From the NCBI RefSeq assembly GCF_001447785.1, contig NW_015172563.1:614150-678149 (forward strand): a DNA stretch of 64,000 bases, read 5' to 3'. Source of the stretch: Gekko japonicus. Taxonomy: Eukaryota. Made by a program: the position numbers and the translations under genes. This document shows positions 1-33,952 of the stretch, piece by piece (position 1 is the stretch's first letter; each line of letters begins with the position of its first letter). Under the pieces are notes generated by a model. The model was not told the origin of the DNA, ran no database searches, and saw nothing but the letters and a program-made list of their open reading frames with translations.

Positions 1-1000
1 AAAGGCATCCACTGGAATGTGGAGTGCCCCAAGGGGCAGTACTGTCCCCGATGCTTTTTAACATCTACATGCACCCTCTCGCCCAGATTGCCCGAAGATA
101 TGGGCTGGGTTGTCACCAGTACTCTGATGATACCCAGCTCTGTTGGGTGGTCGGTCCAACTCTAAACCAAAAGATTTAGACTGGGCATTGCAAGCCGTGA
201 CTGGTTGCATTAGGCTGAGCCGGCTGAAATTGAATCCAACAAAGATTAAGGTCCTGTGCCTGAGTCGGGGCGGTCCGGGGTAGGGATCCCACTCCCGGCC
301 TTTGATGGGGCACCATTGGTGCCAGCGCCAGAGGTTAGGAGTTTGAGAGTGCTCCTGGATCTCTCCTTAACAGTGGAGGCCGAGGTAGCAGCCACTGCTT
401 AGTCGGCCTTTTATCATCTCAGGCTGATTAGGCAGTTGGTTCCCTTCCTCGAATGCAACAACTTGGCAACAGTGATCCATGTGATGGTCACCTTGAGCCT
501 GGATTACTGTAATGCCCTCTACATGGGGCTGCCCTTGTCCCAAATCTGGAAGCTGCAGCTAGTGCAGAATGCAGTGGTGAGGCTGTTATTGTGTCTTCCC
601 ATGCGGGAACACATTCAGCCCGCCCTAAAAGCACTGCACTGGCTGCCTATAGTATACGAGATTCGGTTCAAGGTGCTGGTTATTACTTTTAAAGCCCTTT
701 ATGACCAAGGACCTGCATACCTGAAGGACCGCGTTTCCCCATATGTCCCCCAGAGAGCGCTGCGATCGGCGACCCAGAATTGGCTGGTCCTTCCAACTAT
801 CAAGGAGGCCAGGCTAGCGACAATAAGGGCTAGGGCTTTTTCGGTGGCGGCTCCACTCTGGTGGAATGAGCTCCCGGAGGAGATCAGGGCCCTGTGGGAC
901 TTACTACAGTTCCGCAGGGCCTGTAAAACGGAACTCTTCCAACAGGCTTTTGGAGCCGCCACCATCACTGTCACCACTGACATCTGACAGTTATGAAAAG
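1..1000 (+). mobile_element. L2-clade LINE, 3' part of ORF2 (degenerate RT and C-terminus)
   Basis: GVPQG.VLSP.LFNIYM and HQY.DDTQL RT motifs near the start. The ORF at 436-987 has LDYCNALY.GLP...LQLVQN...HI.P.L..LHWLP, typical of the L2 C-terminus. Confidence 0.85.
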
Positions 1001-9110: not shown

Positions 9111-9449
<339 letters not shown>

Positions 9450-9689
9450 TAATTGGAGTAAGTCTACATAGCCATACTAGGTTTTAGCTTTTGCAGTGGT
9501 CAGATACAAGAAATACATATGTACTACAGAGAAGTTATATGTTCTTGTTTTGCTGTGTTTTGTTATGGTTTTGATTTATCTCTGAGCCATTTTATTTATT
9601 TGCTCTGGGGAACAGAGAACATATTTTATATCAAGAGTATAAAAGTAAGGGTAAGAACAAGGAAATGGAGTTCAATACTGTAGAGAACA

Positions 9690-10865
9690 TACAAGACTTA
9701 CTGGAGCATACAAGAGAATTTCAGAAGAGAATCATCTTGTGATTCATAGACTACAGCAAAGCGTTTGACCGTGTAGATCATGAAAAGCTACGGTTGATTT
9801 TAAAAGAAATGGGTGTACCATGGTATCTTATTATTTTGATGCACAACCTGTACTCCAAACAAGAGGTTACTGTTAGGACAGTATATGGAGAAACAGAATG
9901 CTTTCCAATTGGCAAAGGTGTCAGACAAGGATGTATTTTATCTCCCTATCTCTTCTAACTGTAAGGAGAACATATCATAAGGAAAACTGGATTAGATTTA
10001 GATGAAGATGTAGTGAAAACTGATGAAGGAACATCAACGATTTGAGATATGCAGATGACACCCCACGTTACTGGCAGAAAATAGTGACTACTGCTGAAGG
10101 TTGAAGCAGACAGTGCCAAAGCAGGATTACAGCAGAACTCAAGAAGACAAAAGTAATGACTACTGGGGAATTACACAACTTTAAGGTCTATGGGGTCATG
10201 AAGAGTTGGACTCGACTGTGCCACTGAACAACAACAAAACAAGGTTGATGATGAAGAAATTGAAATTGACTTTCTATTCCTTGGCTCCATCACCAACCAA
10301 AAGGGAGACTGCAACTAAGAAATCAGAAGGAGATTGAGACTGGAAAAGGCAGCCACAAAGGAGCTAGAAAAGATCCTTAAGTTTAAGGATGTGATGCTGG
10401 CAACCAAGATCAAATTAATTAATGCCATAATATTCCCTATTATTGTGTATGGGTGTGAAAGTTGGACAATAAAGAAAGCTGGCAGAAAGAAAGTTGATTC
10501 CTTTGAAATATGGTGTTGGAGAAGAGTTTTACAGATACTGTGGACTGCCAAAAGGACAAATCGGTGGATTCTAGATCAAACCATCCCTGAACTCCCCCTA
10601 GAAGCTAAAATGATCCAATTGAGGCTATCGTACTTATGGTCACATTATCAGAAGACAAGAGTACCTGGAAAAGACAATAATGCTAGGAAGAGTTGAAGGT
10701 AACAGGAAAAGAGGAGGACCTGACATGAGATGAATGGAGTCAATCAAGGAAAACACAGCACTCAGTTTGCAAGACCTGAGCAAGGCTGTTAGGACTTTTT
10801 GGAGGACATTAATTCTTAGGGTCATCATGAGTTGGAAGCGACTTGATAGCACATAACACACATAC
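9690..10865 (+). mobile_element. RTE/BovB-type LINE, 3' part of RT, degraded
   Basis: FIDYSKAFD.VDH, GVRQGCILSP, LRYADD and YGCESWTIKKA...FEIWCWRR motifs, ending in a CA-rich tail. Confidence 0.88.
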
Positions 10866-13800
10866 ACATGAGCCAAATCTTGAGCAACTGGAGTTCCTTG
10901 AGTCTGAGGTGTGTTTCTTGGCCCATCCCAACTGCCGACTTAGAGACAAAAGAGGAAAGGAAGAGAACCCCTACTGCAATATAACTTGCTAAAATGCCAC
11001 TTGAGGAGGTAGAGTAAAGGTTGTGGTCCCGATCTACTACACCTCTTTCGTTTTTCAGTGACCCCTCAGAGAAGCTCATTGGTTTCTATGTACAATGTAG
11101 AGATACATCCTAGAGTATCCATTTTGATGGCCTTTTAAGAGCCAAACTTGAAATTAAATTTTTCCATGAGTCAGGTATGGGTTCCCCCAACACAAAGCAC
11201 ACCGGGGGCCCAATGACTTCATTTGTAGGGTACACTGCATGTGGAGGCCTCCCCCCCAACAAATAATGCCGTCTGGCTGTTTCAGGTTAGAAAAACAGTG
11301 GGAGGGGGAAGCCCCTGCTATGCCACAGTACAGATTGGAAAGGGGTGCTTTGGGTGCTTGGTTTCCAGCTGCTGCCATCTGACTGTGACAGTATGACACT
11401 TGTACCTTGGGGACCCTGACTGGGCTTGTGGGAAAATGTGAAGTCTTATTTCTGCACAGAATGAATATATGTGTGCCAAAACCAGTCAATAGAATTTCAC
11501 AGAAATATGTTTATTTGCATGTGCATGATGAGCTTTTATACCTTTCCTTCTAAGCCTCATAGAATAAACATGGGCATTTTCTTTTATTGGAGTTGATACA
11601 TGCAACAGCTTTGCCTAATGTGCTTTCAAATGCTTGCACAGATTAAAGCCCATCTGTCAATATTTGTTTATTTAAAATGTTTCTGTGCCACCTTTCCACC
11701 ATGTAAAGGGTACCAAAGCCTTGAATGCCATGAAAACAATTCTTTAAAAATGAAGTTTTGATGAACCATAGATGTAAGATCTATTTCATATGCACCTGAA
11801 AATAATTGTTCCGTTTTCCCTGCCATTAATTACAAAATGTAAATAGAAATTTTATGTAAGGGCCTAGTATGGAGAACTGCTTATGGCTAGAGCATAGGTT
11901 TCTGTAAACCTGGATCCCCCAGCCCGGATTTGCGAGAAATCTTTATTCCTGAATAGAGAAAAACACTTTGAGACAAAAAACCTCTAAAATTGTAGAAGCG
12001 CCTTCCGTATGTATGCAGATATTTTTGTGGGGTGGGGGTGGATAATGACATTCAGGTGGCATTTTGGGTTGGTGAAGGAAGCCAAGGTAGCTGTAGTCAG
12101 AAGGGAGGAGGCCTGGGATTCAGGGAGAGGAGAAAATAGGGGATGGAAAGATAATGGGCAGTGCAGGTGGGAAGGAGAGCTACCAAGGGTTTATCATCTA
12201 TATACTAGTAGCCACATGTGGCCCCCACCTGTGGATAGCTAAATCCATGGATTGGGGGCCACACGAAAGCTAAACAAATTTTTCAGCAAACTTCGAGTTT
12301 TGTCAGGTTTGCAGAAAAATCTAAAAATTAAAAAAAATATATAGGGAGGTTTAAATCCCCTGAAAACACAGAGAATACACTTACCTCAGGTGGGCAGCAG
12401 CAGGACAGATGGGTTCTTATTCTGTTTACCTTGTTTGTTGTCAAAACTCTTTTGACAAAACCAATAAAAACATTATTTTTTAAAAAGTTTCCAATTTGAT
12501 ACTTTTAATAATAATATTATTCCCTACTGTCCTCCCCTTTTTTGCAGCTATGAAGCTGTCTTTCTGCCCATTTCTTTCCAGACCCAGCCTGTAGCCAGAA
12601 AATGTTTATTGGAGGGGCAAATGAGAACAGTGGGGGTCAGCCCATCATAATGTATTTACTTTATTATTTATATATTCATGCTTTATTAGTTATTTACCAG
12701 TTTTCTTCTTGAGACTCAAGGTGGATTACATGGCATAGACTATTGTAATCAAATAGCATATGAGATCTAATAAACAATGCAATGGGACTAGGCTTACAAA
12801 AATTACAAAAATGCAAAAAAAAAAAGTTATGCTATGTCCAGTAATGCAGAAAATGAAATTACAAAAAATGAAAACAATGCTGTAAAAGTGTGATAGAACA
12901 TACAACAAATCAATAATATATAGCATACACTGTGGCATAGACTACAGTCCTGTTTTCTATAAGCTTTTTAAAAATGCCCTCCCAAGCAACTCCATTACAT
13001 AGTTTGCAGAATTAAAGAAGTGTGAGAGTCTTCTTCCAAGACAGGTCCAAAAGAGTCACATACAGCTCTCAACTCAAAACAGTTCAACGCATCATCAGCG
13101 ACTTACAACCTCTACTGCATAATGACAGCTCCCTTTCACATACTTGAAAAAATGAAATATGTAGCTTTCTGGTTCTCTTCTACTAGCCTAGCTGAAAAAA
13201 ATCATGAGCACAGGAAAGCTGTAACAGTATAGGTAACTAAGGGATCACAAGCTTCTAGGTGTGTAAGAGAGAGGGTTGCCAGCTGTGGGTTGAGAAATAC
13301 CTGGAGATTTTTGAGGTGGAGCTTGAGGGCGGGGTTTGGGGAGGGACCTCAGCAGGGGTACAATGCCATAGAGTCTGCTTTCCAACACAGCTATTTTCTC
13401 TGGGGAAACTGATCTTTATGTTCTGACCAAGGTCCATAAAGCATCACCATAAATACTAATTACACTTAAATTAATACCCAAAGCCTCATAATCCTATGGG
13501 AATCTATGGCAAGACTCTCATTCAAGTTACCATTTGGCAGTCAGTGTGAAGAATTTAATCTTTGTGCGGTCTGGCTAGCAGCTCTTGCTATGATCATCAC
13601 TTTATAACTCTAAAATCATTCAGTGCAGTCACTATTTTAAATTCCATACTACAAAGTCTCAAACTCAGTGTAAACTAATAAAAATGCAGTTTCCATAGTG
13701 TCTGATGCTGCAGCTGGTGTAACCTATTATACAGACTCAGAAAGGCAATGGCAAACCACCTCTGCTTCTCACTTGCCTTGCAAGCCCTTAGCGGGGTACC

Positions 13801-14398
13801 TGTCCCCAGAAGTTGTCTGTGACTCCTCTCTCTCTCTTTCTCTCTCTCTGAGCACTCAGAGGCAGCCGGATGGGGTGGGGGCAAGGAGGAAAGGCTGGCT
13901 CGTCGGTCTCCCCTCAGGGAGGGGTGCCCTTTACCTGCTCGCCAGAGCCCCCGCACAAATGAGTCCCATGTCATCCTCGCCTTGGCTGAGGGGCGCGCCT
14001 GGCCATGCGCTCTACCTCTTGGGGATGGGCGGGAGGGCGTGAGGCACCTGGATTGGCTGCCGGGTCAGACGGCTGTGATGTTCCTGCTGCCACCACTTGC
14101 CGAGGAGGGCTGCCGGTCCCCGCAGTCAAAGCCAGAGCCACCACTGGAGGAAGGGGGAGGGGAAGAGCAGGGCTTTTGGTGAGGGAGGGGCGGGGTGGGC
14201 TCGGACGCCAGCCAGAACACTGTTTCAGGGCTTTCTGGCCCAAAAATTGTTCTGAGTATATCTTAATTGTCAACATGACCAGCTGTCTGGATACTTCAAT
14301 CTGGAAACTGGACCCAATGGCAGAAAAAGCAGCTCTTTCGAGGTTAACCTCCAAATAATAAAACAGCACCTATAGCTTTAAGAAAAAGGGGTCCTCAG

Positions 14399-14604
14399 CA
14401 GTGTTCCCTCTAAGCTGAGTTAGTGTGAGCTAGCTCACAGTTTTATAGCCTCCGGCTCACACATTTTTGTCTTAGCTCGGGAAGGATGGCTCCAGAGCAA
14501 ACTAATTTATGCAGCAGCCAAATTGCTTGCTCACAACTTTAATGCCAGTAGCTCACAAAGTAGAATTTTTGCTCACAAGACTCCAAAGCTTAGAGGGAAC
14601 AAGG
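14399..14604. mobile_element. ~206-bp hAT MITE (TIR CAGTGTTCCCTCTAAGCT)
   Basis: Terminal inverted repeats and a perfect 8-bp TSD gtcctcag. Same family at 29084 and 37381. Confidence 0.9.
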
Positions 14605-16904
14605 GTCCTCAGTGGCAGCCACAACAGTGTTGTCAGCCTTCAAGGGTTGCTTTCTGTTGGTAACAAGCAGGGTGGGAGAAGGCAGGTCCCTTTCATAGGG
14701 CCAGACCAAGCAGCAAGAACTGAGTGATTTGTTAATTGTTGTGGCTACTGTATGATGATGCCACACAACTTACCTGGGCCCAACAGCCTTAGCCAAGCCC
14801 AGCAGTGGCCATCACAAATTTCACATGAGTGAATTGCTACTGCACTACTTAGCCAGACTTTTCCCAGGGAGAGGCTGCTGCAGGGAGGGAAGGAGGGAAA
14901 ATTGAGATCCAGTGTTGTGTAGTGATTAGAGAGTTAGAATAGAATCTAGGAGACCCAGTTTCATCCATCCAGCCATCAACATCCATCCATTCATTCCATT
15001 TCAAATCCCTACTCTGCCATGGATGCCTGCTGGGTGACTTTGGGCCAGTCACTCTCTGGCAGCCTAACCTACCTCACATGGTTGTTGTGAGGATAAAATG
15101 GAGGAGAAGAGAATGATGTAAGCCTCTTTGGGGGCCATTGGGAAGGAAAGGAGGTTAAATGAAGTAAATAATTACTAAAGCTGAATACTGGGGTTTGGGT
15201 AGATTAAGGAAAAATTGGTTGATAAGTGGGAAGAAGAAAGCAGGAGAAGGAGGAGAAAAAGAGAAAATCGTATAGGGAAGGAGGTACAGGGTAAAATAAA
15301 GTGACTCCTTTGAAGTCCTTACCTATCTTGTATAAAATGCTCAACCATTAATTTAATTTGTGTCCACCATTCCTGTGTTATATAAACCGCTCAAACACAA
15401 GCTTTGGAGGCTTTGGAGGCCATGGCTGGATGGTTACAGCAGAGCCGGTTGAAACGTAATCCTGTTTAGCCTCGACCAGAGCCAGGGCATTTTTTGCCCT
15501 GGCCCCAGCCTGGTGGAACATGCTCCCACCTAAAATCAGGGCCCTGTGGGATTTGTTATCTTTCCACAGAGCCAGCAAAATGGAGCTTTTCCACCAGGCC
15601 TTTGGCTGAGGCGGTGGGCATCCAATAAAATCTTGGTCTCCCCTGCTGAAGATGAACCTACCACCTCATGTGGCCCAGGTTAAGAAGAAGTTTGATGAAC
15701 CAGTGACGCCAGCTGGAAACCTCTGCATAAGGATGAATAGTGCACTCAGTTTTAATTTATGTTGTTTTACATTGTCTTAATTGTCTACATTTATATCTTT
15801 GACATTTTGATATGTTTTGATATTATGCTGTGATCCTCCCTTGCGGGGAGGGCAGAATATAAATTTGAGTAATAAGGAAATATATATTAAAAATAAACAA
15901 ATTATTAAATTAAATATGTGTTTTAAATTGCAGTTGTCCAGAATATTAATATTTGAAATGTCTCCATAAATGCTTTTAGCTTTGTTTTTCAAAATTTCCC
16001 AACAGTGCTTAGAAAACAGTCTTGACTTGTCTCCTGTATAATAATTTGCCCTTTTATGTTGCATAGCCTTTGTTCTGAAGCAAAATAAGTACACATAAGG
16101 CATCTAAAATTTTATAATTATATTTATTACGTTTTCAGATTATACCAACATTAATTTAGTTGAAAAAACTGTAGAGAAAGTTTATGAAGAACAGAATAAC
16201 AAAAATGAGTAGAAATGGAACAACAAAGTATAACAACTCAGAAAGCCTCCTCATTTGAATAATGTTATTACATTGTTTTAATTTTGAATTAGATTGTTTT
16301 AATTATTATATTCATGTTTTGCTATTGATTTGATTTTAGGTATCCCTCGTATTCTTCCCTTTCAAAGAGTTTCACCAGCTCTCTTCTGCTGTTCCTATAG
16401 AACTTTCCCATTGCCTGGGTTTCCTTAGGATACAAGTCTAGCTGTACTGTTTCTTTCCTGGCTTGATATGTGGAAAACATCAAGATCTCAGTTAGAATAC
16501 AAATACCATCAGGCATTGTTTTCTTACTGTTCTCCCCCTTTCCTCCCAAAAGAGACATCTAAGAGCATAGCGGTGCAGTCCTGAGTCAAGTTATTTTGCT
16601 TAGGACAACAGTGCAAGATTCTTCTGTTCCTCCTTGAGCTAGTTCAGAACCCTGGCTTTTCCCTCCCAGAAATGCAAACATCTAATGGTAGAACCAAGGG
16701 AAATTAACAAACTGAATGATATAAAGGAAGGAAGGGTCATGTCCCATGGAAATACTCCAGTTATGTGATAAAAATATCTCATTATAAACAGATATGTAGC
16801 AACAGTAACAGAAAAGGAACCAAGTTTTTTATACTCCTTAAATATTTGTGCTTTAAACATACACATAGTGAATATCAGATCAGAAAAACATGGAGTCTTA
16901 TGTT

Positions 16905-16910
16905 TTTATT
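16905..16910 (-). terminator. Candidate poly(A) signal for the MSH5 transcript
   Basis: Minus-strand AATAAA about 330 nt after the MSH5 stop, followed by a GT-rich stretch (ATGTGTATGTTT near 16866-16855). Confidence 0.45.
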
Positions 16911-17242
16911 TGGGATGTGGTTTCTTTCTATGAATTGTTTGACATTTTATAACAGATGTGCAGGTGGCTCATCAGGGCTATAGTAAATTCCCTGGTTTGG
17001 CAACATGCTAGGTAGTGAAATAACAGGGAGAAGTGGGATGTCAAACACCTGAGAGGCCACAATATAAGGCTAGTGGACTGTATTCAACTTGGTGGATCAC
17101 AAGTTGCATAAGTCCGATTGACATCTGTAGAAGAATTCACTTGAGAGCAGAGCAGTGTTTCTTTCTAATGTGATTACTAGCGTAACACAAACTTCTTTCT
17201 TTCTGTGTGGCAATTCAATACATTCATTATCTTCTTAATAGG

Positions 17243-19690
17243 TTAAAGAATGGAAGATGCAGATGTCAGCACCTCTTGATTCATAAACTCCTTTAAATCC
17301 AGTTGGGGGTCATCAAGATCTAGGGAAAGGAATTTATCCACTAGAGATTTGCAACTTTCCAACTGTTTCTCTTTAGAAGAATGGTCGGTACGTTTGATAG
17401 GCTTTCCATTGCGGAGCAGCTCTGATACTTCTACTCCTCGGGCAATCACTTTAGGAGGCATGCCAGCCAAAGCTGCAATATTGGCTGCATGGCTGACAGT
17501 GGAGACACCTTCTTTGATCTGATAAAAAAACACAAGCTCATCTCCATCTTGGTGGGTGTCCATGGTCAGGTATTGCACTTGGGAAGCGTCTGGCAGAAGC
17601 CTCAGCTGTATCAAGCTGTGGAAATTAGTGGCAACAAAAATGTGTGGACACTGGGTTGCTTGTCTGATCCAATACCTTAGCACCGCAGCCAGAAGAGAGA
17701 GGCCATCCACTGTGTTTGTACCTTTGCCAAATTCATCTATGAGCACCAAGGACCTTTCAGTGGCATTGTTCACGGCCTTGGCTATTTGGTTAAGATCAAT
17801 CATGAAAGTGGACAGTCCAAGAGATACTGACTCTCTACTGTGGATCCTTGTGTAGATTCCGTCCACTGTCCCTATCTCAGCCTCAGCAGCAGGGACATAG
17901 CTGCCAATCAGAGCCATAAATGTGATGAGGCCTACCTGTTTTAAATATATACTCTTTCCAGATGAATTGGGCCCAGTAAGGATCTTGATCCGGCCAGAGG
18001 TTTCAGTGCTGTCCACTGAATTGGGAACAAAAGTTTTTGCACACAGCTCCATAAGTGGATGCCTTCCATCTTTAATACGGATGATCTGAGAGTGAGAAAA
18101 ATGAGGTCGGGTATATCCATTCTCTCGAGCCATCACTGTCAAGGACAGGAGCACATCCAGCTGTGCTATGCATTCAATCACATCGTTAAGAACAGCTGAC
18201 TTTTCCAGTATCTTAGTCTGTAGCTGGTACATGAGTAGTGTTTCCTGATCTCTTATTTCACAATGCAGGTCACCAAGCATGCTGTCCAGTTCTTTGGTCC
18301 TGGCGCTTCTGTAGTGCAACTTTTCCTCTGATAAGAACATGAAATCTAGACCCTCAATCTCAAAGTCAGTCTTATCCACCATTGTGGGCAGCTGTGGAAT
18401 GGAGAGCAAGAATCCTAACAAGGGGATATAAATAACACTACAAGATGGAATCTGATTATCTAGGTCCTGCAGTTCTTTTCGGGCCACGTCAGTGAGGAAG
18501 TCTGAGAGCCCCATTAGCTTCCGTTTCTTTTCATCAATGATGGGATCTACATTTGGTCTGACAGTGAAGTGATTTTCTGAGATGCTAGCTTCAAAATCCA
18601 CCACTTTGCTGATTAGACTGGCAATGTAGTGCAAATCGTCAGTGAAGACCTGAGAAATAGTCTGGAAAAGTTCAATGATGCTGGGCAAGGAGCGACATGT
18701 ATCTCTGAGGCATATGGCGCTATAAACAGTTTTGTACAGTGCCTGCCAGTCACTTACCTTTGTATTTGAAAGAGCCATTCTTCTAAGAATCATAGGTACA
18801 TTTTTAATATTTTTGAGGCACTCTTGTAAGGTCAGAACTGTTTCATGATTCCGAGCTAACAAGAAGAACTGGATTACATCAAGACGTTTGTTCAGCTCTG
18901 TCACATTGCGGGTGGGCCTCATCAGCCAGAGTCTCATCAGCTTTTCTCCCCACTTGCACCTACAGTGGTTCAGAATTCCATATAAACTGAGTCCTTCTTT
19001 TTTCCCACTAGCATGCTTATAGACAGAAGGATGAACCTCACTTTTAAATACCTGCAGCACGCTGTAAGTGTCTTGATCCACATGTATAGTATCTGTCAAT
19101 ACAAACTTTTTAAATGCCAGAACGGGAACTCCAACACTGCTATCTTCCAGTTCAACTCCAACCCTTCTCCTTTCAATAAACTTTAACAGTCCTCCTAATG
19201 CTCGTATGATCAGTGGGCTCTCAAAAGGTATAATGGAGGACAAATAGACGATTTTCTCAGCTGCCGTCATGTGAGAGGGAATGAAGGGGAATTGCTTAGA
19301 CAGAATCCTTTGCTTGCTTACTTCTAAACAAAAATCCGTATTTGGATAGTAGACAACTTCTGTTTTTCCTCCTTCCTGCTTGTCTCCTACCATGGCACTT
19401 ATATTGTTTAAGAATTTGGCTAAGGTATAATCTTGCTTAGCACTACTTAATATGCATTGGGGAAGTACTTCATCAATTACTTTTTGAAGGAGTTTAAGGT
19501 CTTCACTGTCTGGTGTGTCAGCCATGAAGTAGATTGAGCAGTCTCCAGTGTCATAATAAGTTATTCCCAGGTCTCCAGCAAACCACAGTACACACATGTA
19601 GATCTCAGACTGCCCTTGTTCCTCTTCATATTCAGAGAGAGGCATTGGTGGAGGCTGGCAGTGGGTGGCAACCGTAGCTCTGGCACTCAT
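17243..19690 (-). CDS. MSH5: MutS homolog 5, intact single-exon ORF (probable retrogene) nested antisense in an AKAP7 intron
   Basis: Uninterrupted 815-aa ORF. MSH5-type N-terminus ([43 protein letters not shown]) with no mismatch-binding domain I. Walker A GPNSSGKS, signature STFMIDL, Walker [12 protein letters not shown], and ATNFH. AAAATG start context. Confidence 0.96.
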
Positions 19691-22600
19691 TTTTTTGACA
19701 GCTCTGTGTTGTATGGCTGTGTGAACAAGAATATTTTGTTAGTACTTCATCCTGCGATACCTCTTTCCTTACACATAATTGCCCTCTCCTGGGTTAGTCA
19801 TTTTCTCTCTCCACATCAATGTCATTTCATTAGGTATCCATTCATTCTATAGATTATAGTAGAATTGTATTACTATATGGATTCTCCTCTCACCTTCTCT
19901 ATATTGCTGCACAGTTTCCCAATCCTTTGAGGGGGGAAATATGTAGACAGCCTGTTTCTAACAGGAACTGAGTATATCTGGTTATTAGTAACAAAGGCAA
20001 AACTTCAATTGGAAGCAAATCTACTTCAACTAGAACTTGTCTTGTTTTAAGACAGCTGAGATTTTTACATCCATTGAACTTTTTATGCCACTTGAATTCC
20101 TTCTCATACTGATAGCTTATAGTTTTGCTAATATCACAAAAACACATCTTAAATAAAAATTATAAAAGTAACAATTACACAATTAACTCTTTTCAACATT
20201 CTGTGCTTTCTTTGTATAGTTCATGTGTGAGAGGTAAGATTGTATAAAAAAGGGAATGGTGTGTATACATATTTGTATAAAGAGCAATTATATCTATTCA
20301 CTGATATATCTCCCAGTGGTGGGTGATAAGCACTGATATCTCAGAATATTCCCTCTCCCATTCTTCCTTCTTTGCTACCTACACTGTGGAAAGCAGCTGC
20401 CCTAGCCAATAAAAATAATTTTGAACAACTTTAGAAAAGGGAATGCTTCCAGAGAATCAGAAGGGCAATTGTACTGCATAATTCAAGACGGAAACTAATA
20501 TTCACCAAAATTAAATGGGTCTTCTCTGAAGATGACACTTGTCAAGGAATCCCAAAACAAACTCCGTGGGTCCCCAGGGGAGTTGTGCACAAGTAACCAG
20601 ACTGTTGTTTAATTTTTAAAAGGATTTATAAAGTTTATTTCAATTTCTATCAATATGAAAATTTATTCTGTAGCCAATACATTACTCTAAAATCATGCAG
20701 CAGGAAAACAAGAAAACTAGCTTAACTACCTAACACTGTTTAGAATTTGCTATAAAAATTGATATATTTTTCATAACAAGGGGATAGGATCAGATTTCTG
20801 TATTGCTAATATCACCAGGTATATTATCCCTAAAGGTAATTAAAGCAGCTTTTAAAAAACAGCTTCAGAAATTAAATTAAATCTGTGGAATATTGAGTTG
20901 GACATTAATATGAAACCATATGCTAGAAATTTTAGGTAATGTTTATTTAAAATATTTATGAACCACCTTTACTCAAGTTGTGGGCCCAAGTTGGTGTAGA
21001 AGACACACTTCAGCATGGAGATTATTAAAAACACAAACCATAAAGCACATTGTCCCACTATGATAAAACACATCAATCCAAATCAAACAGCCACAGCATG
21101 GTAATAAAATTAACAGCAAGCCCTTAACAGCTTTACATGCCTTCCTAAATATGGGTAAGGATGAAGAACTTCTCACATCTACTGAAAACCTGTCTTAGAG
21201 CGTTGGAGCCAGCACTGATGAAGCCCTGGGACAGGCTACCACAGACTGAACCTCCCTGTGGAAGGGAACAAAAAAAAAGTTGGTGAGAAGAACATAGTTG
21301 AACACAAACTACTGTTACACCTATGATGTGCTCTGTGTGAAAAGCTAGTCATCTATGAGAATCATAGACCAGTGCTAGAGGAAAAAAACTTAATCCTACT
21401 TTTTAAACTCCCAAAATTATGTTTCTGAATCATTCCTTACTGAGAATTGGATACTTTTATTAAACTTATTTTACTGCCCTGTTCTCTAGTACTGAATAGT
21501 TAACATAATTAAACAGAATATACTTGGCTATAGGTTGCAGTAAGGTAGGGCCAAGGGCTAAAATGAAAACTTCGCTGTTGCAGTATATTAACTGTTGTGC
21601 AGGGTTTCTTTAGAATTGTCACCATTCTAGAATGTATATATATTATTTTAAATTTATTTAGTGCTTTTCTAGTTGTGTCCTTAGACTTATCCAAATATTG
21701 GACTGAATCTTATGACTTCCTTATACTAAGTAAGAAAGCTTCCTCCGACAGAGGAAGGCTTATCACTTAGCAAAAAGCAAATGTAGGATCCAAATCCACG
21801 ATTATTACCAATCACATTAGAAATACAGATAAAAGATACATTGTCAGTTGCAGAAGAAGATCTTCCCATAACTTAGCCTTCCTACAATAGCCCTGGTGAC
21901 ACTCTCCCCTCCGAAGCCATGAGGCCAGGGATTAGGGAACCTGGATGGATGGCTTTATGGCACAAGGGGGTAGTTATTATATGGAATCAAGACATCTGTT
22001 CACTTGTCTGCCAGCTCTGCCTCTGCTGGTAGAAGAGACTTGACTGGTGGTGGTGGTGGGGGAGTTGATTTAATCCAACTCCTCATCCTCACAGTGCTGC
22101 ATGTCTTTTTATTCTCAATGGTCCTCTGAATCAGAGCAGTGCTTCTTGGGAGATCTGAAGGTGGGGAATGTCAACTTCTGTAAGCACCTTTTAAGAAAAG
22201 TTTTTATTGACAAGTTGTCACTCACTTTAACTGCAGACTTAATGATCAAGTACCTATAATGAAAGCAGCAAAAGGCGCAACCTAAATCCAAGGTCAGTGT
22301 TTTGCATACTTAGAGGACCCCAGGTGTGCAGAAAACTATTGCTTTGTCCAGGGGTCATTTCGTAGAAAAAGAGGTGCAGGAGCTCATTAGCATAACTCAT
22401 TAGCATAACTTATTTTCATATGCCACACCCTCTGACATCACCGGAAGTGTGTCAGAAGGCAACATCCACCGCTCAAACTCCACCCAAAAACTCTCCAGGT
22501 ATTTCCCAACTCAGAGCTGGTGAGCCAGCTTTACACTTTGACTAAAGACACTTTAGGTTTCCTTTGCTCTTGCAGGGAAGCTACCCTACAAGAAGCATAA

Positions 22601-23164
22601 AAATACAGATCAAGTTAGTACGCTTTTTCTTTTTCTGCAATAAATCAGGAAAACAAAATATTATTCTGGCAACAACATGCCTGGGAGAGATATTAACTGA
22701 AAGGGCAATGTTTATAGCAGTCTTGAGGAGCATGCGTTCTATTGCACCTTCACACACATTAAGACCAGACAAGGTATAATCCCAAACAGGCATCACACCA
22801 GCAGCCATGTACACAATGCTGCCCATGTTTGCCATCTACCATAAACACATCAAGGCAAGCTATAGCAGGGATAGCCCTACAGTAAGATCAGGTGAGACAT
22901 GATCTGCCTTAATTGGGTGTTATTAAAGATTGGGGAGGGAAAGCAACAGATTTGTTCCAGGGGGCCCAACACACTGGGAAATTCTCTTACTCAAAACTCA
23001 AACAGAGCAAGTGGGAGACATGCAAGACATCAACTTCCAAAGAGTCATGATACCGGACAGCTTCCCAACAGCTCACACCTCATGCCATTTTTTTGGTCTG
23101 AATTTCTTAACACAGCTTGGGTCAGCCCTGAACTAAAATCCAAATACTGACACTAAATACCAGT

Positions 23165-23431
23165 NNNNNNNNNNNNNNNNNNNNNNNNNNNNNNNNNNNN
23201 NNNNNNNNNNNNNNNNNNNNNNNNNNNNNNNNNNNNNNNNNNNNNNNNNNNNNNNNNNNNNNNNNNNNNNNNNNNNNNNNNNNNNNNNNNNNNNNNNNNN
23301 NNNNNNNNNNNNNNNNNNNNNNNNNNNNNNNNNNNNNNNNNNNNNNNNNNNNNNNNNNNNNNNNNNNNNNNNNNNNNNNNNNNNNNNNNNNNNNNNNNNN
23401 NNNNNNNNNNNNNNNNNNNNNNNNNNNNNNN
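23165..23431. other. Assembly gap (other gaps at 26427-26476 and 56672-56817)
   Basis: Runs of N. Confidence 1.
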
Positions 23432-24493
23432 CCCCCCCCCCAATCTTGTTCATGCAGATAGTGGAGAGAGAGAATTAAGTTGTGCAAAGAGATGTATGCC
23501 AGCCTCCAGGTGGGACCTAGGGATCCCCTGTAATTACACCTTATTTCCAGAGTACAGACTACAGAAATCTGTTCCCCTGGGGTGAAATGGCTGGTTTGGA
23601 GGGTGGACTCTATGGCATTGTACCCCACTGTGGTCCCAGTCCTCCCCAGGCTCCACCCCCAAATCTGCAGGAGTTTCCCAGCCTGGATCTGACAACCGTG
23701 CCCTCCCATTCTCTGCCAGTGGCCAGGTCCCCCAATTAGCCACAGATCTTTGCTTATTGACTTACGTTGCATACACTGGAGCAAGGATTCCTATATCTCC
23801 TTGGATCCCCAAACATTGAAGTCTAAATGGAGGGCCTTTTGGAATAACATCTTTCCAAAATGATATGGCAGGTATGGGGTTGGGGTGGGGGTGTCGAGGC
23901 CAGAAAGATGCCTGCCTGCTCTTTTATGTCTCTCTCTCCACTTCCTTCCTTCCATTTCCAAACCACACCGGGATCCTCGCCGCTCACATTGCAAGCCACA
24001 CCTCAACGTCTCATGGGAATCCAGCAGAGCCAAAGAGACCTGCGGAAAGCAAAGAACCAGGCTGGCTTCCCTTCCCTTCCAGTGGGGAACGGGGCGAGAG
24101 AGGGAGGGCAACACAGAAAAGTCCTTCCCTCGCATGCCTCACCTCCTGCTCAACTCTCCATGGACTTTTCTAGGAATTGGCGAGCCAGCCTCACCATCGG
24201 TTTTAACCCTTTCGAAGGGGGAGAGTTAGTGGCCTCCAATCAAGAAGGGGTTTTCTTATGGACACACTGAAAGACCAGACAGATTTCTGGAGGAGGTTGC
24301 TTGCAACAAAATGGTTCGGCAGGTGTCTTGGGGGCATATACACAATGGCTGCTGCAGAAGGCAGAGCCACGTACACACAGAGGAAATCCAAGTGCAGGAG
24401 AGAAGAGGGGTAATTTAAAAGATACACAGGGAAAGAAGAGTGAAAGAGAATACAATCAACACTGTGACAGCTGCTGCTTTTCAGGCTAGCCCC

Positions 24494-24892
24494 GAATTCT
24501 ACATGGCCACTATTGAAAAGGTAGCAGCCAGCCAAACACCTTGGGAAAACTCTCTGGGCGACATGGATGCACCCAGAGGAGAACGGCGCGCAAAAGTGAG
24601 GACTGCCCTCCCCAGCCCAGTTCCCTTACTTTGAGGAGATTGTGTGCTGCCCTGTAGCCGGCCTCTGGTCCACCCCCAACACCAGGAGGCAGCCGAATTC
24701 TAGATGGACACTGTCAGAAAGGTAGCAGCTGGCCAAATGCCTTGGGAAAACTCTCTGGGTGACACGAATGCGCCCAGGGGAGAATGGCATGCAAAAATGA
24801 GGACTACCCCTCGCCCGGTTCCCTTACTTTGAGGAGGTTGTGTGCTGCCCTGTAGCCGGCCTCTGGCCCGCCCCCAGCGCCAGGAGGCAGCC
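24494..24892. repeat. Diverged tandem duplication (~200 bp x2) of the Klotho exon-1 3' end, donor and intron start
   Basis: Units 24494-24694 and 24695-24892 both start GAATTC and end GGAGGCAGCC. Each carries the minus-strand AHNLLK|GTAAGG junction (donor G at 24629 and 24827). Confidence 0.9.
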
Positions 24893-25260
24893 GGCTGGTG
24901 GCGTAGCCATGCCAGGTCACAAGATAGGGGCTGTTGACGGTGAGCCATTAGCGCACGTGGCAGCCGAAGCTCCTGAAGCAGAGCTCGGCATAGTCCGAGA
25001 AGCACTCGACCAGCGCCAGGCTCTCCCAGCCACTGTGGGTGTCCTACAGGGGCTGGGGCAGGTCTCAGTGGCATAGAATGACCACAGGCTCAATGCCGCG
25101 GGCCTTGAGGCTCTCCCAGAGGCTCCCGTAGAACAGAGGGCAGCGGGGTTGATGGGTGCCGTGCCGTGGGGGAGGAGGCATGCCCAGGCCAGCAAGAAGC
25201 AGTAGTGGGAGACGCCCAGGAGCCGGAGCCCGTCACACTCGCACGGTAGCCATCGAGGAA
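24828..25260 (-). pseudogene. KL: Disabled copy of alpha-Klotho exon 1 (KL1 glycosyl hydrolase family 1 domain), splice donor retained
   Basis: Manual translation across frames gives GLRLLGVSHYCFLLAWACLLPHGTAPINPAAL /frameshift near 25135/ [99 protein letters not shown]|gtaagg. This parallels KL (LGVTHYRFSISWARVLP...PVVTLYHWDLPQ.LQD..GGW...DYAELCFRHFG..V.YW.T.DNPY.VAWHGYATGRLAPG...AHNLL). Stops at 25065-67, 25044-46 and 24948-50. DYAELCF and GYATxRL favour KL over KLB. Confidence 0.88.
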
Positions 25261-27331
25261 TGCTACACGTGCTGCTTCGCACTCCTGTTGGGGGTGGGGC
25301 TTGCTGCCTACGCCGCTGCCAGAGCACCGCTCCTGCATGCTCCAGGTCGAAGTGACCCCTGCTTTGTCCATTAAAAGTAGAGTTTTTTTTCCAGAAATGG
25401 CCCAATGAGGGCTGAGCACGCTTATTTCCATTAAGAACAATTCAGAGTCAGTTAAAGGGGAAAAGAAATCAATGAATATGATGACGGAATACAGCTGTTC
25501 AAATTCCTAATAACTTACAGTATTCTAAAAGGGGAGATTTGGGTTACAGGGGAATTACTCCACTTGTGACATCATTTGTCCCTGTTTTATTTTTCTGGCA
25601 CTGAATTTCATGATATATGTGGGCCATGGGGTTGCGAAGAGTCAGACTTGACTGTAAACAACAACAACAAAGTAGGACAGCAAAACACAGCTCCCAAAAG
25701 ACAAGATAAGGGTTTCTATATATTCAGGGAACTTTCTGGGAATGTAGAAAAGTATAATTTTGTAAATTAAAGGAGAGACCACCTTCACCCCACACCCAAA
25801 ACAGCATGATGAGGATTGCCCATTAACTGGCCTGCTCAAGCTCATAATATTTTTAATACTCTGGAGTGGCAAATTTTAGTTAGGGGAAATTTCACAAAAA
25901 CGTCTCTCTCCTCCCCACATCCCCACCACTGACTCCTTGCCATTTTCCAACTGGTACTATATTTTATAGAATTATTCAATACATTCTAAATTTTCTTCAG
26001 ATCTTTCCCATCCAAGTTAATTGCCCCTCAGTTTTCAGGTCTCTGAACACTTCTGAAACTTGAAAAATTGGTTTTACCATGAAGGTTTTTGGTTCTGCCT
26101 GTCACAGGGCTGCTAACCCCAAGTGTTCTAAAACAACTCAGTTTTATCTGTATTTTACTCTGATTTCTGGGCCTCTAGGGAACACTGCTGTCCCATGCTT
26201 ACCTGCTTTAAGCACAAAGTTTTTTAAAAGAAGTAAAGATTTAGCTCTTCTACTTGGCAGTGCAGGAGAGCTCCTGTTTTGTTGATTCCTTCTTTCTCCT
26301 CAAATCTTGTTTCACAATTCTTGACTGATCTTGCCTTCCCTGCCATTACAGATGAGGGGATGTTATTTAAACCCTCACACAGACACATCATTTTTCATTC
26401 CCCCCGCCCACTCACCCACTGTTTCCNNNNNNNNNNNNNNNNNNNNNNNNNNNNNNNNNNNNNNNNNNNNNNNNNNATTGTATGCTGTAGTCTTTTTTCT
26501 TTTAGTTTCCACATCTCCAGGAGATCACACTGAGCTGGGCCTGAGGTACCAGGTTCCCCTTTTTCCTAGGCAGCTCCTCAGCGTTCATCCTGAGAAAGAG
26601 CTTTATTAGCAGGCCACACTAGACGTAGATATAGAGGCTGACAGATCTAAGGAATTGTTTAAGAATGTCTTATAAGTACTTTGGTTTAATCGCCAGTTTA
26701 TGAATGTAATGGATATGGATTGTTGGTCATAAATTAAAAACCTTTTCTATGTTTCTAGGTCAATTAATTTTCTTAGCTAATTTATATAGAATAACGCAGG
26801 GATATAAAAACACCCTTTAAACAGAGCAAAGGACCACTTCACTGATGTGAAGGAGGTTCCCATATGTTCTTCCACAAAACATCCCAGCTCCTCTCCCAAG
26901 CAAACAAAAATTGCCTGAGTAAGTGCTTCCTAGGCAAAAGCAGAACCTCCTCATGAGGTCAGTTGCTGGGTGGTACCATTTCAGATAACTGGGGGGGGGG
27001 ATTGAATATTGAATGCTCCCCCACATAAAATGCTCCCTGTGATGCAAAACCAGCTTGTCAAAGGGTAGAATCAAGGTTTTGACTCAAGAGACTTCATACA
27101 TATATCCTGAAAGCAGTTGCATAATCCTTTCAAATTCAAAAAGGGTTGTGATGCTTGCGATCCTCCTCTGTGGATTAGATGTGTCACATGTCTTAATTTT
27201 TTTCTTAATGGCTCACTGTGTGATCTGGTACTTTGCTGGTATTATTTATATTTTGTCCTCTGTACATTATGTGTGAACACACAGCGAGTGTATACGGGGG
27301 AAAACAGAACACACATCGTTTCAATGACTAA

Positions 27332-27345
27332 CCACTAGATGGCAG
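27332..27345 (+). promoter_or_regulatory. Candidate CTCF core motif
   Basis: CCACTAGATGGCAG matches the CTCF core CCASYAGRKGGCRS, in non-repeat sequence. Confidence 0.45.
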
Positions 27346-27364
27346 TACTATTTCAGTAATTAAA

Positions 27365-27526
27365 TAAAATGTTGAACAATGATGAAATCTGGTCTTTAAA
27401 GTTTTATGACCAAATTCTGTGATTACTGCTTATTCCTTATCCTAGTAAAATGTTGAACAATGATGAAATCTGGTCTTAAAAGTTTTATGACCAAATTCTG
27501 TGATCACTGCTTATTCCTTACCCTAG
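27365..27526. repeat. ~81-bp tandem duplication
   Basis: Two near-identical units TAAAATGTTGAACAATGATG...CCTAG at 27365-27445 and 27446-27526. Confidence 0.9.
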
Positions 27527-28307
27527 TATCCATTAAATTTCCTCAAAGTAAATAAATGTATGATTTTTAAAAACAGTGTGATTATCTGTTACTATTGTTT
27601 GACATATACCATAATGCGACTTTAAAGGAACTGATAATAGCCTCTCTCTGTTGTTACCTTTTATATAAATACTCAAATAAAATTTATCTTCATGTATACC
27701 TAAAATTTGAAGGAAAATACATGTTAAATTGTCAGTCTGCAAAGTATAAAGAATAATTATTGAGCCAGAGTATTATTTAGATTTTGAAGGCTGGCTTGAT
27801 GTCTTATTCTTTCATTTGCTTTTATCATTCAGAAATAGATATTGGCACTACTTTTTGCATATACTATAACAACCATAATATCTTGTTAATAGACACAGTT
27901 AGAAACATTTTATCATAGTAATGTTGAATAGTTCTGCTTGTATGATTTGCTGCTTATATTACACCAGTGAAATTGCACCAATGCTGGCAGTATATGAATG
28001 TGATATACTGGTAGGCATCCATGAAAGCAATCCACAATTTTTAACAGGTTTCCATTCCCGGATCTGCTGTACTATTATCAACAGATACCACAGAACAAAG
28101 GGTTATGACAATGCTGTTTGAGAGCTTACACCACTGCTACAAAAATGGCGTTAGCCAAACAATCAAGCAGTTTTATTTTAAAATGTCACTTTGTTGAAAT
28201 GTTCAGTAGGAACATAGGAAAGAAATATTAAAATCAATACATTTTGATGCACAGTGCAAGTGCTGTACTCCTAAGATTATTACTACTACGGTATTAATAA
28301 TAATTAA

Positions 28308-28511
<204 letters not shown>

Positions 28512-31470: not shown

Positions 31471-33245
31471 TATATTCTTTATCACTCTTATTTATTAATT
31501 TAATTTATTTAAAATATTTATAGCTCTCATTTTCTATTATAAATATCCAAGGCTGCTCAGAACATAGTAATTAAAAATACACACGGGTAAAAACCAGACT
31601 TGTATAAAGAAGTTAAAGTATTCAACAACAGCGGGTAGCAAAACACAACATTTGAAATGATAGAAACAGAGCAGAGTATAAACAGCAGTCATATTGAATC
31701 AGTTCTTTAGGAGCTCATGTGATTAGAGACTTGAAATTCGCTGTCTGCATCAGTGGCTTAAAAAATTGAGCCCAAACAAATTACTGTGGCATTTCTAATT
31801 GTATTCATTTGGAATGTTGATATTTTGTTTAGGATTTTAAACATCTGTTTCCAGTTGTTTCAGTCCTAGTATAAGTGCTGGAAATTTCATATAAATATAA
31901 TACAAAATTACAGGTAAGTGGATGTGGAAAAGTGACAGGCTTTTTTTGTAGCAGAGAAAAAAATGCTCCCTGCACACTTGCGAAAGTACAGTTGCCACTA
32001 AGCAGAGAACCTGAAAACTTCCATTGGTTAACATTTTATATGCAAGAATGGCAACAATACCAATTTGTATTTTAGGGAGAATGCCTATGGAATGAAGTTG
32101 AAATTTTCTTTTTTAAATTCATAAATTTGAAAACACAGTCTTTGAAAACATAGTCAATGAAACATTACTAGCAATAGCTTCTAGCTGCATGTGTATTAAC
32201 AGCACAATCCTAAACAGCTTTACAGAAAAGAGTGTAACTCTGTTTAGGATTGCACTGTAAGAATTCCATCTCAAGAAAAAGATTAACAGTTGAACTGAAG
32301 TCTGTCATCCGGATTACAATCTTTGGGAAACAGCCTCCAAAAGCCGATAATCTGTAGGGGTTGGAAGGCTGTACAGAAACAGTAATTCCATTTTTTCAGC
32401 AGTTTACCTAAAACATTCCAAATATTAAGCAACATTTGACTATTAGACCCAGAATGCGAGGAGTGCCAATATGAAAATGGGAACTAGCTAGTTAGAATTC
32501 TTGATGGCATCTAGGAAATTTGTGATGCAGGCATCATTCTCATGAATCAGAATGAGTCTTACGCTTAGATGCTTTTCCTAACTTTTTCATTTTGTAATAA
32601 AACTCTGTTTTAAAGTGAGAAGCAATTTGTATAATGGTAAGTTATTCTATGGTTAATTATCATACTAATAGTAAAAAAATTGAACAATTCTTTATGTACT
32701 GTATAATTTGTCAGATGACCCCATTTAAGGTACCAGAACTGAAGGATAACACTATGTTTGATCAGTTTTATTTACGTGCAAAATTCTGCTGCTTAATCAA
32801 ACCATTAAGAGCAGTTAGCTTGAGCACAAGCATGGACCTTTGTAGGGACTAAGAGCACCATCCTATGCATGTTTACTTGGTGATAAGTCTCATTGAATTA
32901 CTTGGCCAAGTATGTATACATAAGCTTGCTGCCTGTGATTTCTGTTTCATTGTGACACAAAATATATCCCTGAGCAGCTGAAAAAATATTCAAGGCCCGA
33001 ACAGGAAACAGTTGCTTTTGCTGTTCTGCCTGCCCTGTTTGTTTGTTCACTTATTTTATTTTACTTTATTAATACCCCATCTTTCTCCTTAATGGGAACC
33101 TAAAGCAGCTTACATTATTCTGTTCTTCCATTTTAATCTTCACAACAACCATGTGGTGGGGTAGGTTAGGTTGACAGTGTGACTCGCCCAAGGTCACCCA
33201 GCAAGCTTCCATGGGACAAGTGGGGATTCAGACCTGGCTCTTCCA

Positions 33246-33952
33246 CAGGGCCAGCCCCAGCTTATTTTGCACCCTAGGTGAGGATCCCTTCTGGCACCCC
33301 CCCGTGTGCCCACCAATTTTCTCTTCTGCCCCCCCCCCGTGCTGCTGCTCCTCCTCTTGAGAAGTTAGCTGGCCAAAGAGGCGGCGGCGGTCACCTGGTC
33401 AGAGCCAGCGGGGGGACTTTTTGGCGGGGGTGGCGGGTGCAGTTTGCCGCCCCTCATCAGGGTGCCCGGAGAAGAGGCTGACCAGTGTGGCTCTCAAAAG
33501 CCGTCGCTCCCCTGGCCCTGCTGTTCCTCCTCCTCCTCCTCCTCCTGAAAAGTTAGCTGGCCAAAGAGGCAGCGGCGGTTACCCAGTCAGAGCCAGCGAG
33601 GGGGCTTTTTGAGTGGGGGGGCAGGTGCAGTTTGGTGCCCCTCGTCAGGGTGCCCGGAGAAGAGCTGACCGGTGGGGCTCTCAAAAGCCGTTGCTCCCCC
33701 GGCCCTGCTGCTGCTGCTCCTGCTGCAGCTGCCAGTCCCCGGCCGCAAGGAGGAGGAGGAGAAGCATTCACGTTCCGCTGGGAAGGGGGCAGGCAGGGAG
33801 AAGTTAGCCGGCCAAAGAGGCGGTGGATGGCAATGGTGGCGGCAGTCACCTGGTCGCGGAAATGCAATGGCGGGGGGGTGCAGTTTGGCGCCCCTAAGGA
33901 CCGGCACGCTCTAGGCGAATGCTTAGTTTGCCTAGTGAGCGAGCCGGCCCTG
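33246..33952. mobile_element. GC-rich hAT-type non-autonomous element with internal tandem repeats, nested in a SINE
   Basis: Termini CAGGGCC...GGCCCTG and TSD ctcttcca/ctgttcca. GAAGTTAGCYGGCCAAAGAGGC-like motif recurs three times (near 33360, 33548, 33800). It interrupts a SINE spanning about 33060-33995. Confidence 0.8.

What the first reader, a model, noticed from the sequence alone, without database searches (positions are those of the whole stretch)
17243..19690. Intact intronless MSH5 nested antisense inside an AKAP7 intron
Seen: a 2,448-bp uninterrupted ORF with all MutS ATPase motifs, lying between two AKAP7 exons on the opposite strand, with no visible poly(A) remnant or TSD. Known: mammalian MSH5 is a ~25-exon gene in the MHC class III region that works with MSH4 (MutS-gamma) in meiotic crossover. 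Inferred: this is an old retrocopy kept intact by selection, since neighbouring retroelements are full of stops. It may have replaced the MHC-linked parental gene, which would be a relocation of a core meiosis gene by retroposition.
Basis: partly seen in the sequence, partly recalled or inferred. Interest (0 to 1): 0.88.

Follow-up and report, generated by a model that had tools for sequence, protein, structure and literature searches.

The report
Reptile-bird MSH5 is an old retrogene
This gecko's meiotic crossover gene MSH5 has an intron-free coding sequence sitting backwards inside an AKAP7 intron; a bird has the same gene in the same intron, so it is a selected retrogene older than the lizard-bird split and apparently the only MSH5 of reptiles and birds.

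Summary
Window 17243-19690 (-) is an intact 815-codon ORF with MutS domains III/IV/V and Walker A/B motifs. It is 89-93% identical to annotated gecko MSH5. It lies antisense between two consecutive AKAP7 exons (9256-9368 and 28341-28488, +).

New here: a 32.6-kb bird genomic contig (L001, from a metagenome) carries an uninterrupted 811-codon MSH5 ORF. It sits in the same AKAP7 intron, also antisense. Only the three coding pieces still align between gecko and bird. Gecko-bird dN/dS is 0.08-0.12, with dS 1.0-1.5.

All sampled sauropsid MSH5 proteins form one clade in species-tree order. A published Anolis sagrei MHC map runs VARS-VWA7-CLIC1-DDAH2 with no MSH5 listed. So this is not a gecko novelty or a pseudogene. 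It is the sauropsid MSH5 ortholog: a retrogene fixed before the lepidosaur-archosaur split that very probably replaced the MHC-linked parent.

The protein is already in NCBI nr. I found no paper describing its retrogene origin.

Not shown: gonadal expression (the tissues of the laid RNA runs are unknown and depth was about 0), absence of a parent copy in this genome, and the 5' UTR exons (inferred only).

The parts
17243..19690 (-). MSH5 coding sequence: 815 codons plus stop, no intron
   Evidence: aligns over 100% of its length with MSH5 proteins of other vertebrates
19717..19718 (-). Predicted 3' splice acceptor (AG after a pyrimidine tract). The large exon would start at 19716, 26 nt before the ATG.
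   Evidence: Sequence. The Gekko kuhli MSH5 model reads across exactly this junction. Contig cover in run X1 ends at 19718 with none in the next 2.4 kb. Inferred, not proven.
16905..17242 (-). 3' UTR up to the first AATAAA (16910-16905, 333 nt after the stop)
   Evidence: poly(A) site use not tested
21177..21255 (-). Candidate 5' UTR exon 2 (79 nt), with acceptor CCACAG| and donor |GTGAGA
   Evidence: Homologous to residues 24-50 of the Gekko kuhli model P0152, and splice sites are canonical. No read or contig cover in the four runs laid.
25559..25640 (-). Candidate 5' UTR exon 1. The 5' end is undefined; the donor |GTAATT follows 25559.
   Evidence: Homologous to residues 1-23 of the Gekko kuhli model P0152. 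It lies outside the stretch laid with reads, so it is untested.
9256..9368 (+). AKAP7 exon upstream of the host intron
   Evidence: (AKAP7_NLS profile 121-157); 80% nt identity to bird L001 16791-16907
28341..28488 (+). AKAP7 exon downstream of the host intron
   Evidence: (AKAP7_NLS profile 161-207, E 1.9e-9); 78.5% nt identity to bird L001 5590-5763
9369..28340 (+). AKAP7 intron that hosts MSH5 on the opposite strand

Best explanation
The ORF is the functional MSH5 gene of this gecko, the MSH5 subunit of MutS-gamma, which works with MSH4 in meiotic crossover. It descends from a processed mRNA copy that inserted, antisense, into an AKAP7 intron in a stem sauropsid. That happened after the split from mammals and before lepidosaurs and archosaurs/turtles diverged, roughly 320-280 Mya by standard dates. 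The copy gained transcription, with a small spliced 5' UTR. It took over the gene's role, and the multi-exon parent between VWA7 and CLIC1 in MHC class III was lost. Shown here: the intact ORF, the antisense nesting, the same position in a bird, strong purifying selection, and a single sauropsid clade. Inferred: the retroposition mechanism, loss of the parent in this genome, the 5' exons, and meiotic expression.
For: Identity and intactness. Best matches are gecko MSH5 at 89-93%. Identity then falls in species-tree order: other squamates 83-87%, turtles and crocodilians 81%, birds 75-80%, amphibians 72-73%, mammals 65-69%.

Orthologous position: bird contig L001 has an uninterrupted 811-aa MSH5 ORF at 9995-12430. 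AKAP7 exon homologues lie on the opposite strand at 16906-16784 and 5743-5591. They hit AKAP7_NLS profile 121-158 and 162-208, the same two consecutive exons as in the gecko.

Constraint: only these three coding pieces align between the two introns. dN 0.13, dS 1.0-1.5, dN/dS 0.08-0.12. Differences by codon position are 123/76/380.

Single lineage: the tree gives one sauropsid clade (SH-aLRT 98), with the crocodilian and turtles nested between gecko and bird. The sauropsid stem is 0.052, against 0.28 for the mammal stem.

Compact bird genes: Tauraco MSH5, 775 aa, sits on a 4,406-bp genomic contig.

Parent locus: the human order is DDAH2-CLIC1-MSH5-C6orf26-C6orf27(VWA7)-VARS2. The Anolis sagrei MHC map lists VARS-VWA7-CLIC1-DDAH2 without MSH5.
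Against: No poly(A) tract or target-site duplication survives in the gecko, so retroposition rests on complete intron loss plus the new locus. In Anolis, absence rests on a gene list that was cut when stored. Three raw RNA runs of the species label gave about 0 depth on the 5' end of the ORF. Their tissues are unknown. The runs that hold 21-38% of the ORF's words are only guessed to be RNA. Turtles, crocodilians and tuatara are placed by phylogenetic bracketing, not by their DNA.
Confidence: 0.85

Rival explanations
1. The retrogene is old and functional, but the multi-exon parent also survives in this gecko or in some sauropsids. That would be duplication, not replacement.
For: At least one bird (Pithys) carries two MSH5-like genes.
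Against: The 120 best database hits show a single sauropsid clade, with one protein per species apart from Pithys. The two Pithys copies are sisters inside passerines, so they are a late duplication of the retrogene. The Anolis sagrei class III map has no MSH5 between VWA7 and CLIC1.
Confidence: 0.07
2. It is a young, lineage-specific processed pseudogene or retrocopy that merely has not yet picked up stops.
For: The coding sequence is intronless and lies in an intron among decayed retroelements.
Against: The same copy sits in the same intron in a bird. dS is 1.0-1.5 with dN/dS about 0.1. The flanks are diverged beyond alignment. The protein tracks the species tree.
Confidence: 0.02
3. The gene moved as DNA (segmental transposition) and lost all its coding introns stepwise, without an mRNA intermediate.
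For: No poly(A) or target-site duplication is left to prove an RNA intermediate.
Against: Every coding intron is absent in both gecko and bird, and no flanking parental sequence came along. Simultaneous total intron loss with relocation is the classic signature of retroposition (established knowledge; see PMC5803294).
Confidence: 0.04
4. It is an assembly artefact, with cDNA contamination stitched into the scaffold.
For: None beyond the intronless coding sequence.
Against: An independent bird contig shows the same arrangement. The protein is annotated in at least five other gecko genomes.
Confidence: 0.01

Closest known systems
Vertebrate MSH5 (MutS-gamma subunit; human, mouse and Xenopus gene in MHC class III)
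   Same: It is the orthologous protein. It is full length, with MutS domains III-V, no MutS domain I, and intact ATPase motifs. It is 65-69% identical to mammalian MSH5 and nests in the MSH5 tree.
   Different: The coding sequence has no introns, against about 25 exons in mammals (established knowledge). It sits in an AKAP7 intron instead of between CLIC1 and VWA7. Sauropsid proteins are 811-815 aa, against about 830-835 aa in mammals. A preprint describes a mammal-specific 38-aa C-terminal segment that is absent in non-mammals (10.64898/2026.06.16.731784); I did not check the alignment for it.
Retrogene replacement / 'orphan' retrogenes, e.g. amphioxus SYCP1 (PMC5803294) and orphan retrogenes (PMC3548309)
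   Same: A single-coding-exon copy of an essential meiosis gene sits at a new locus and does the parent's job, while the multi-exon parent is gone. Both have acquired non-coding 5' exons (AmphiSYCP1).
   Different: Here the replacement is shared by a whole amniote class-level clade. It is nested antisense in a host gene's intron, and that nesting has been kept since the lizard-bird split.
Nested intronic genes in vertebrates
   Same: A complete gene lies on the opposite strand inside a host intron, and the host-guest pair is conserved across species.
   Different: The guest's origin by retroposition can be dated by an outgroup state (multi-exon and MHC-linked). No functional link between guest and host is known.

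Membership tests
MSH5 ortholog (MutS-gamma) | MutS core and ATPase domains (III, IV, V) with intact Walker A/B | tested here: met
   Pfam MutS_V 1e-52, MutS_III 1.7e-28, MutS_IV weak; motifs; PDB MutS/MSH3/MSH2 hits at 1e-57 to 1e-43
MSH5 ortholog (MutS-gamma) | No mismatch-binding MutS domain I | tested here: met
   No PF01624 hit at E<=0.001
MSH5 ortholog (MutS-gamma) | Groups with MSH5, not other MSH paralogues, and follows the species tree | tested here: met
   All 120 best hits that carry a name are MSH5. In the tree the window sits inside Gekkota, sister to Heteronotia.
MSH5 ortholog (MutS-gamma) | Pairs with MSH4 and is expressed in meiotic prophase | not tested
   The tissues of the RNA runs are unknown and depth on the ORF's 5' end was about 0. 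No complex was predicted.
Retrogene (processed retrocopy) | All parental coding introns absent | tested here: met
   One ORF covers residues 1-815 of the orthologues. The same holds in bird L001. The multi-exon ancestral state comes from established knowledge of mammalian MSH5.
Retrogene (processed retrocopy) | Located away from the parental locus | tested here: met
   It lies inside an AKAP7 intron. The parental slot is CLIC1-MSH5-VWA7, and no MSH5 is listed there in Anolis sagrei.
Retrogene (processed retrocopy) | Poly(A) remnant and target-site duplications | tested here: inconclusive
   None found in the gecko. The bird has an A-rich patch about 300 nt after the stop. Non-coding sequence no longer aligns between gecko and bird, so absence is expected and says little.
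Retrogene replacement (orphan retrogene) | Retrocopy under purifying selection | tested here: met
   dN/dS 0.08-0.12 between gecko and bird
Retrogene replacement (orphan retrogene) | Parental gene lost | tested here: inconclusive
   The support is indirect: a single sauropsid clade and the Anolis sagrei class III map without MSH5. This genome could not be searched.
Processed pseudogene | Frame disruptions or neutral evolution | tested here: not met
   There is no stop or frameshift in 815 codons, and dN/dS is about 0.1.

The most novel reading that the evidence does not exclude
All living reptiles and birds run MutS-gamma crossover control on a retrogene. A processed MSH5 copy landed antisense in an AKAP7 intron in a stem sauropsid, replaced the MHC class III parent, and has stayed nested in that same intron ever since. 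This would be an unreported clade-wide retrogene replacement of a core meiosis gene, and it unlinked MSH5 from the MHC.
Probability: 0.7. Interest if true: 0.65.

Novelty: new member of a known kind. Interest (0 to 1): 0.58.

Why it matters
Retrogene replacement of an essential single-copy gene is rare. Documented cases are few, and amphioxus SYCP1 is the meiotic example. Here a core crossover gene was swapped for its own retrocopy in the ancestor of all reptiles and birds. It moved out of the MHC and gained a new regulatory setting inside AKAP7. Yet it evolved more slowly than its multi-exon mammalian counterpart.

This gives a natural experiment on how a meiosis-specific expression programme is rebuilt from scratch. 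It explains why MSH5 is missing from sauropsid MHC class III maps. It also offers a compact single-exon target for MSH5 genetics in chicken or lizards. The gene itself is ordinary and already annotated; only its history is new, as far as the searchable literature shows.

Tried and rejected
- Paper searches for MSH5 with retrogene, intronless, AKAP7, single exon, class III/reptile, and chicken/gonad found no description of a sauropsid MSH5 retrogene. A 2026 preprint comparing MSH5 across species, chicken included, does not mention it.
- The genome-contig scan found nothing.
- Read laying on 19450-25449 showed no splice joint into the acceptor. It showed no cover of candidate exon 2 or of the Klotho-like patch. 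The raw RNA runs had about 0 depth on the ORF's 5' end. Candidate exon 1 (25559 and above) lay outside the stretch, and the cap was one call.
- My first reading of the X1 contig as carrying 108 nt of upstream exon was dropped. Those letters most likely run off the low end of the stretch into the ORF.
- A YY1-like motif seen before the bird's candidate donor has no counterpart near the gecko gene.
- tblastx of the gecko Klotho-like patch against the bird CpG island gave only marginal hits. No Klotho-like motif was visible in the bird frames, so homology of the two upstream regions is rejected.
- A search of our findings for VWA7 and CLIC1 windows of this genome found none.
- Supplement part 4 of PMC9679377 held no class III list for Anolis carolinensis.
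- Other vertebrate-like partial metagenome loci (for example L012) were not opened, because a human host could not be excluded.

Full report
**Observation**

The window holds one long ORF at 17243-19690 on the minus strand, 815 codons plus stop. Nothing else above 108 aa lies in 16-21 kb.

- Pfam finds MutS_V (1e-52), MutS_III (1.7e-28) and a weak MutS_IV. There is no MutS domain I.
- Solved MutS, MSH3 and MSH2 chains match at 1e-57 to 1e-43.
- Walker A (GPNSSGKS, 573), Walker B (LVLIDE, 648), STFMID (627) and TNFH (688) are intact.
- On the plus strand, two exons with canonical splice sites flank the ORF: 9256-9368 and 28341-28488.
- These exons hit consecutive parts of Pfam AKAP7_NLS, profile 121-157 and 161-207. 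The ORF therefore lies antisense inside a single 18,972-nt AKAP7 intron.
- I found no A-run of 7 or more within 1.7 kb after the stop and no believable flanking direct repeat.

**What the protein is**

The best database matches are annotated MSH5 proteins, and identity falls in species-tree order:

| Group | Identity to the window protein |
|---|---|
| Geckos (Heteronotia, Euleptes, Eublepharis, Sphaerodactylus) | 93, 92, 91, 89% |
| Other squamates | 83-87% |
| Turtles and alligator | 81% |
| Birds | 75-80% |
| Amphibians | 72-73% |
| Mammals | 65-69% |

The exact protein is already in NCBI nr and UniRef, on a 1.18-Mb contig. So this is the annotated MSH5 of this gecko, not an extra copy.

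**The decisive comparison**

I therefore scanned metagenome contigs with an alignment of 25 sauropsid MSH5 proteins. One hit, L001, comes from contig Ga0065711_1002624 (32.6 kb). It is host DNA of a neognath bird: its MSH5 is 95.7% identical to the penguin and gannet proteins.

- L001 carries an uninterrupted 811-codon MSH5 ORF at 9995-12430.
- On the opposite strand, it has homologues of the same two AKAP7 exons, at 16906-16784 and 5743-5591. They hit AKAP7_NLS profile 121-158 and 162-208.
- The intronless gene is therefore in the same host intron, in the same antisense orientation, in a gecko and a bird.
- Between the two introns, only these three coding pieces still align at the DNA level: 76.7% over 2,385 nt for MSH5, and 78-80% for the AKAP7 exons.

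**Selection**

On 811 aligned codons, dN is 0.13 and dS is 1.0-1.5, giving dN/dS of 0.08-0.12 by four methods. Differences by codon position are 123/76/380. The MutS III-V core is the most constrained, at 0.045-0.066. This excludes a young pseudogene.

**Phylogeny**

I built a maximum-likelihood tree of 41 MSH5 proteins rooted on cartilaginous fishes.

- It recovers the amniote clade (SH-aLRT 99), mammals (100) and one sauropsid clade (98). The amphibian rows sit below the amniotes.
- Inside the sauropsids are squamates (100), turtles (99), and alligator plus birds (97).
- The window sits inside Gekkota, and L001 inside Neoaves.
- The two taxa shown to carry the AKAP7-nested intronless gene bracket crown Sauria. 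Turtles and the crocodilian nest between them, so their proteins descend from the same copy.
- The sauropsid stem branch is short (0.052) against the mammal stem (0.28). There was no burst of change after the relocation.
- Further support for compact bird genes: the Tauraco MSH5 (775 aa) lies on a 4,406-bp genomic contig.

**The parental locus**

In human class III the order is DDAH2-CLIC1-MSH5-C6orf26-C6orf27(VWA7)-VARS2 (table in PMC1309616). The Anolis sagrei MHC gene map lists VARS, VARS, VWA7, CLIC1, DDAH2, MPIG6B and ABHD16A in a row. MSH5 appears in that file only in the human reference list (supplement of PMC9679377). Anolis sagrei nevertheless has an 814-aa MSH5 that is 86% identical to the window protein. 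This fits loss of the MHC-linked parent. Two limits apply: the file was cut when stored, and the gecko's own class III region was not available.

**Mechanism and date**

All coding introns were lost at once, and the gene moved to an unrelated locus. That is the signature of retroposition, and the lack of a poly(A) tail or target-site duplication is expected at this age. The tree keeps amniotes together. The copy therefore arose after the amphibian split and before lepidosaurs and archelosaurs diverged, about 320-280 Mya by standard dates (my knowledge, not computed here). The most likely lineage is the sauropsid stem.

**Gene structure**

The gene is not strictly intronless.

- A pyrimidine tract and AG at 19718-19717 lie 26 nt before the ATG.
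- The bird has an acceptor 1 nt before its ATG, with a candidate donor 141 nt upstream.
- A Gekko kuhli model (P0152, 873 aa; the record is flagged UNVERIFIED_CONTAM) reads across exactly the gecko junction.
- Its two upstream exons have homologues in the window with canonical splice sites, at 21177-21255 and ending at 25559.
- The extra N-terminal residues are not conserved in Paroedura. I therefore read these exons as 5' UTR.
- This is inference. Exon 2 had no cover in the runs laid, and exon 1 was outside the stretch.

**Expression**

Eight runs of the species label, from two studies, hold 21-38% of the ORF's sampled words. Their type is only guessed to be RNA. In run X1 a 380-nt contig covers the ORF's 5' end and stops at 19718. 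There is no cover in the next 2.4 kb of unique intron. That fits an exon edge and a transcript rather than random DNA cover.

Three raw RNA-seq runs of unknown tissue gave about 0 depth on the ORF's 5' end. Gonadal expression therefore remains untested.

**Literature**

Seven full-text searches found no paper describing an intronless or retroposed MSH5 in birds or reptiles. A 2026 preprint on MSH5 domain evolution that aligns chicken does not mention it. The concept itself is known as retrogene replacement or orphan retrogenes. Amphioxus SYCP1 is a meiotic precedent (PMC5803294).

**Verdict**

The interest lies in its history: a clade-wide, roughly 300-My-old retrogene replacement of a core meiosis gene, with conserved antisense nesting in AKAP7. 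It is a new member of a known kind.

Other vertebrate-like metagenome loci (for example L012) were left unopened because a human host could not be excluded.

Noticed in passing
window 24800-25300 (-): A Klotho exon-1-like pseudo-exon lies on the MSH5 strand in the only CpG-rich patch of the intron (GC 0.65, CpG o/e 0.54). Glyco_hydro_1 scores E 6.7e-5. It has in-frame stops, and a motif of about 25 aa appears twice about 200 nt apart. It would lie in MSH5 intron 1, about 250 nt downstream of candidate exon 1. It had no read or contig cover, and no clear counterpart in the bird.
   Followed up: partly
window 22250-22650 and 23450-23850: Very high RNA and contig depth, mostly from reads that fit only partly and carry many variant letters. 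This is the behaviour of an abundant interspersed repeat (SINE-like), not of a local transcript.
   Followed up: no
window 1-1000, 1278-1900, 9743-10693, 35851-36396 (+): Reverse-transcriptase-like ORF fragments broken across frames.
   Followed up: no
L001 8500-9500 and 9790-9994: The bird has a strong CpG island (GC 0.70-0.77, o/e 0.65-0.71) 0.5-1.5 kb upstream of MSH5. A YY1-like AAGATGGCGGC motif sits just before a candidate donor CAG|GTAACA, and an acceptor lies 1 nt before the ATG.
   Followed up: partly
L001 12726-12755: An A-rich patch (ATTAAAAAAA, then a run of 10 A) about 300 nt after the bird stop codon, at a distance similar to the gecko's AATAAA (333 nt). It could be the present poly(A) site context or a relic of the retrocopy tail.
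   Followed up: no
P0046 and P0057 (Pithys albifrons): This antbird has two MSH5-like proteins on different large contigs. They are sisters in the tree, and one is on a longer branch (0.057 against 0.010). This looks like a late duplication of the retrogene.
   Followed up: no
L002 68-1339: A 2.7-kb metagenome contig encodes the C-terminal half of an MSH5 (residues 388-812, 53% identity) without interruption. The organism is unknown, and the contig could be a transcript or another intron-poor MSH5.
   Followed up: no
window 19562, 19588, 19679: The X1 contig differs from the window at 4 of 269 positions, of which three are listed. Two of those are synonymous and one gives R4S. That is high for one species label, so the run may be from another population or a close relative.
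   Followed up: partly
window 13700-14350, 33200-34150, 50000-51200: GC-rich stretches with long open frames of low-complexity (G/R/P/A-rich) translation. They were not examined.
   Followed up: no
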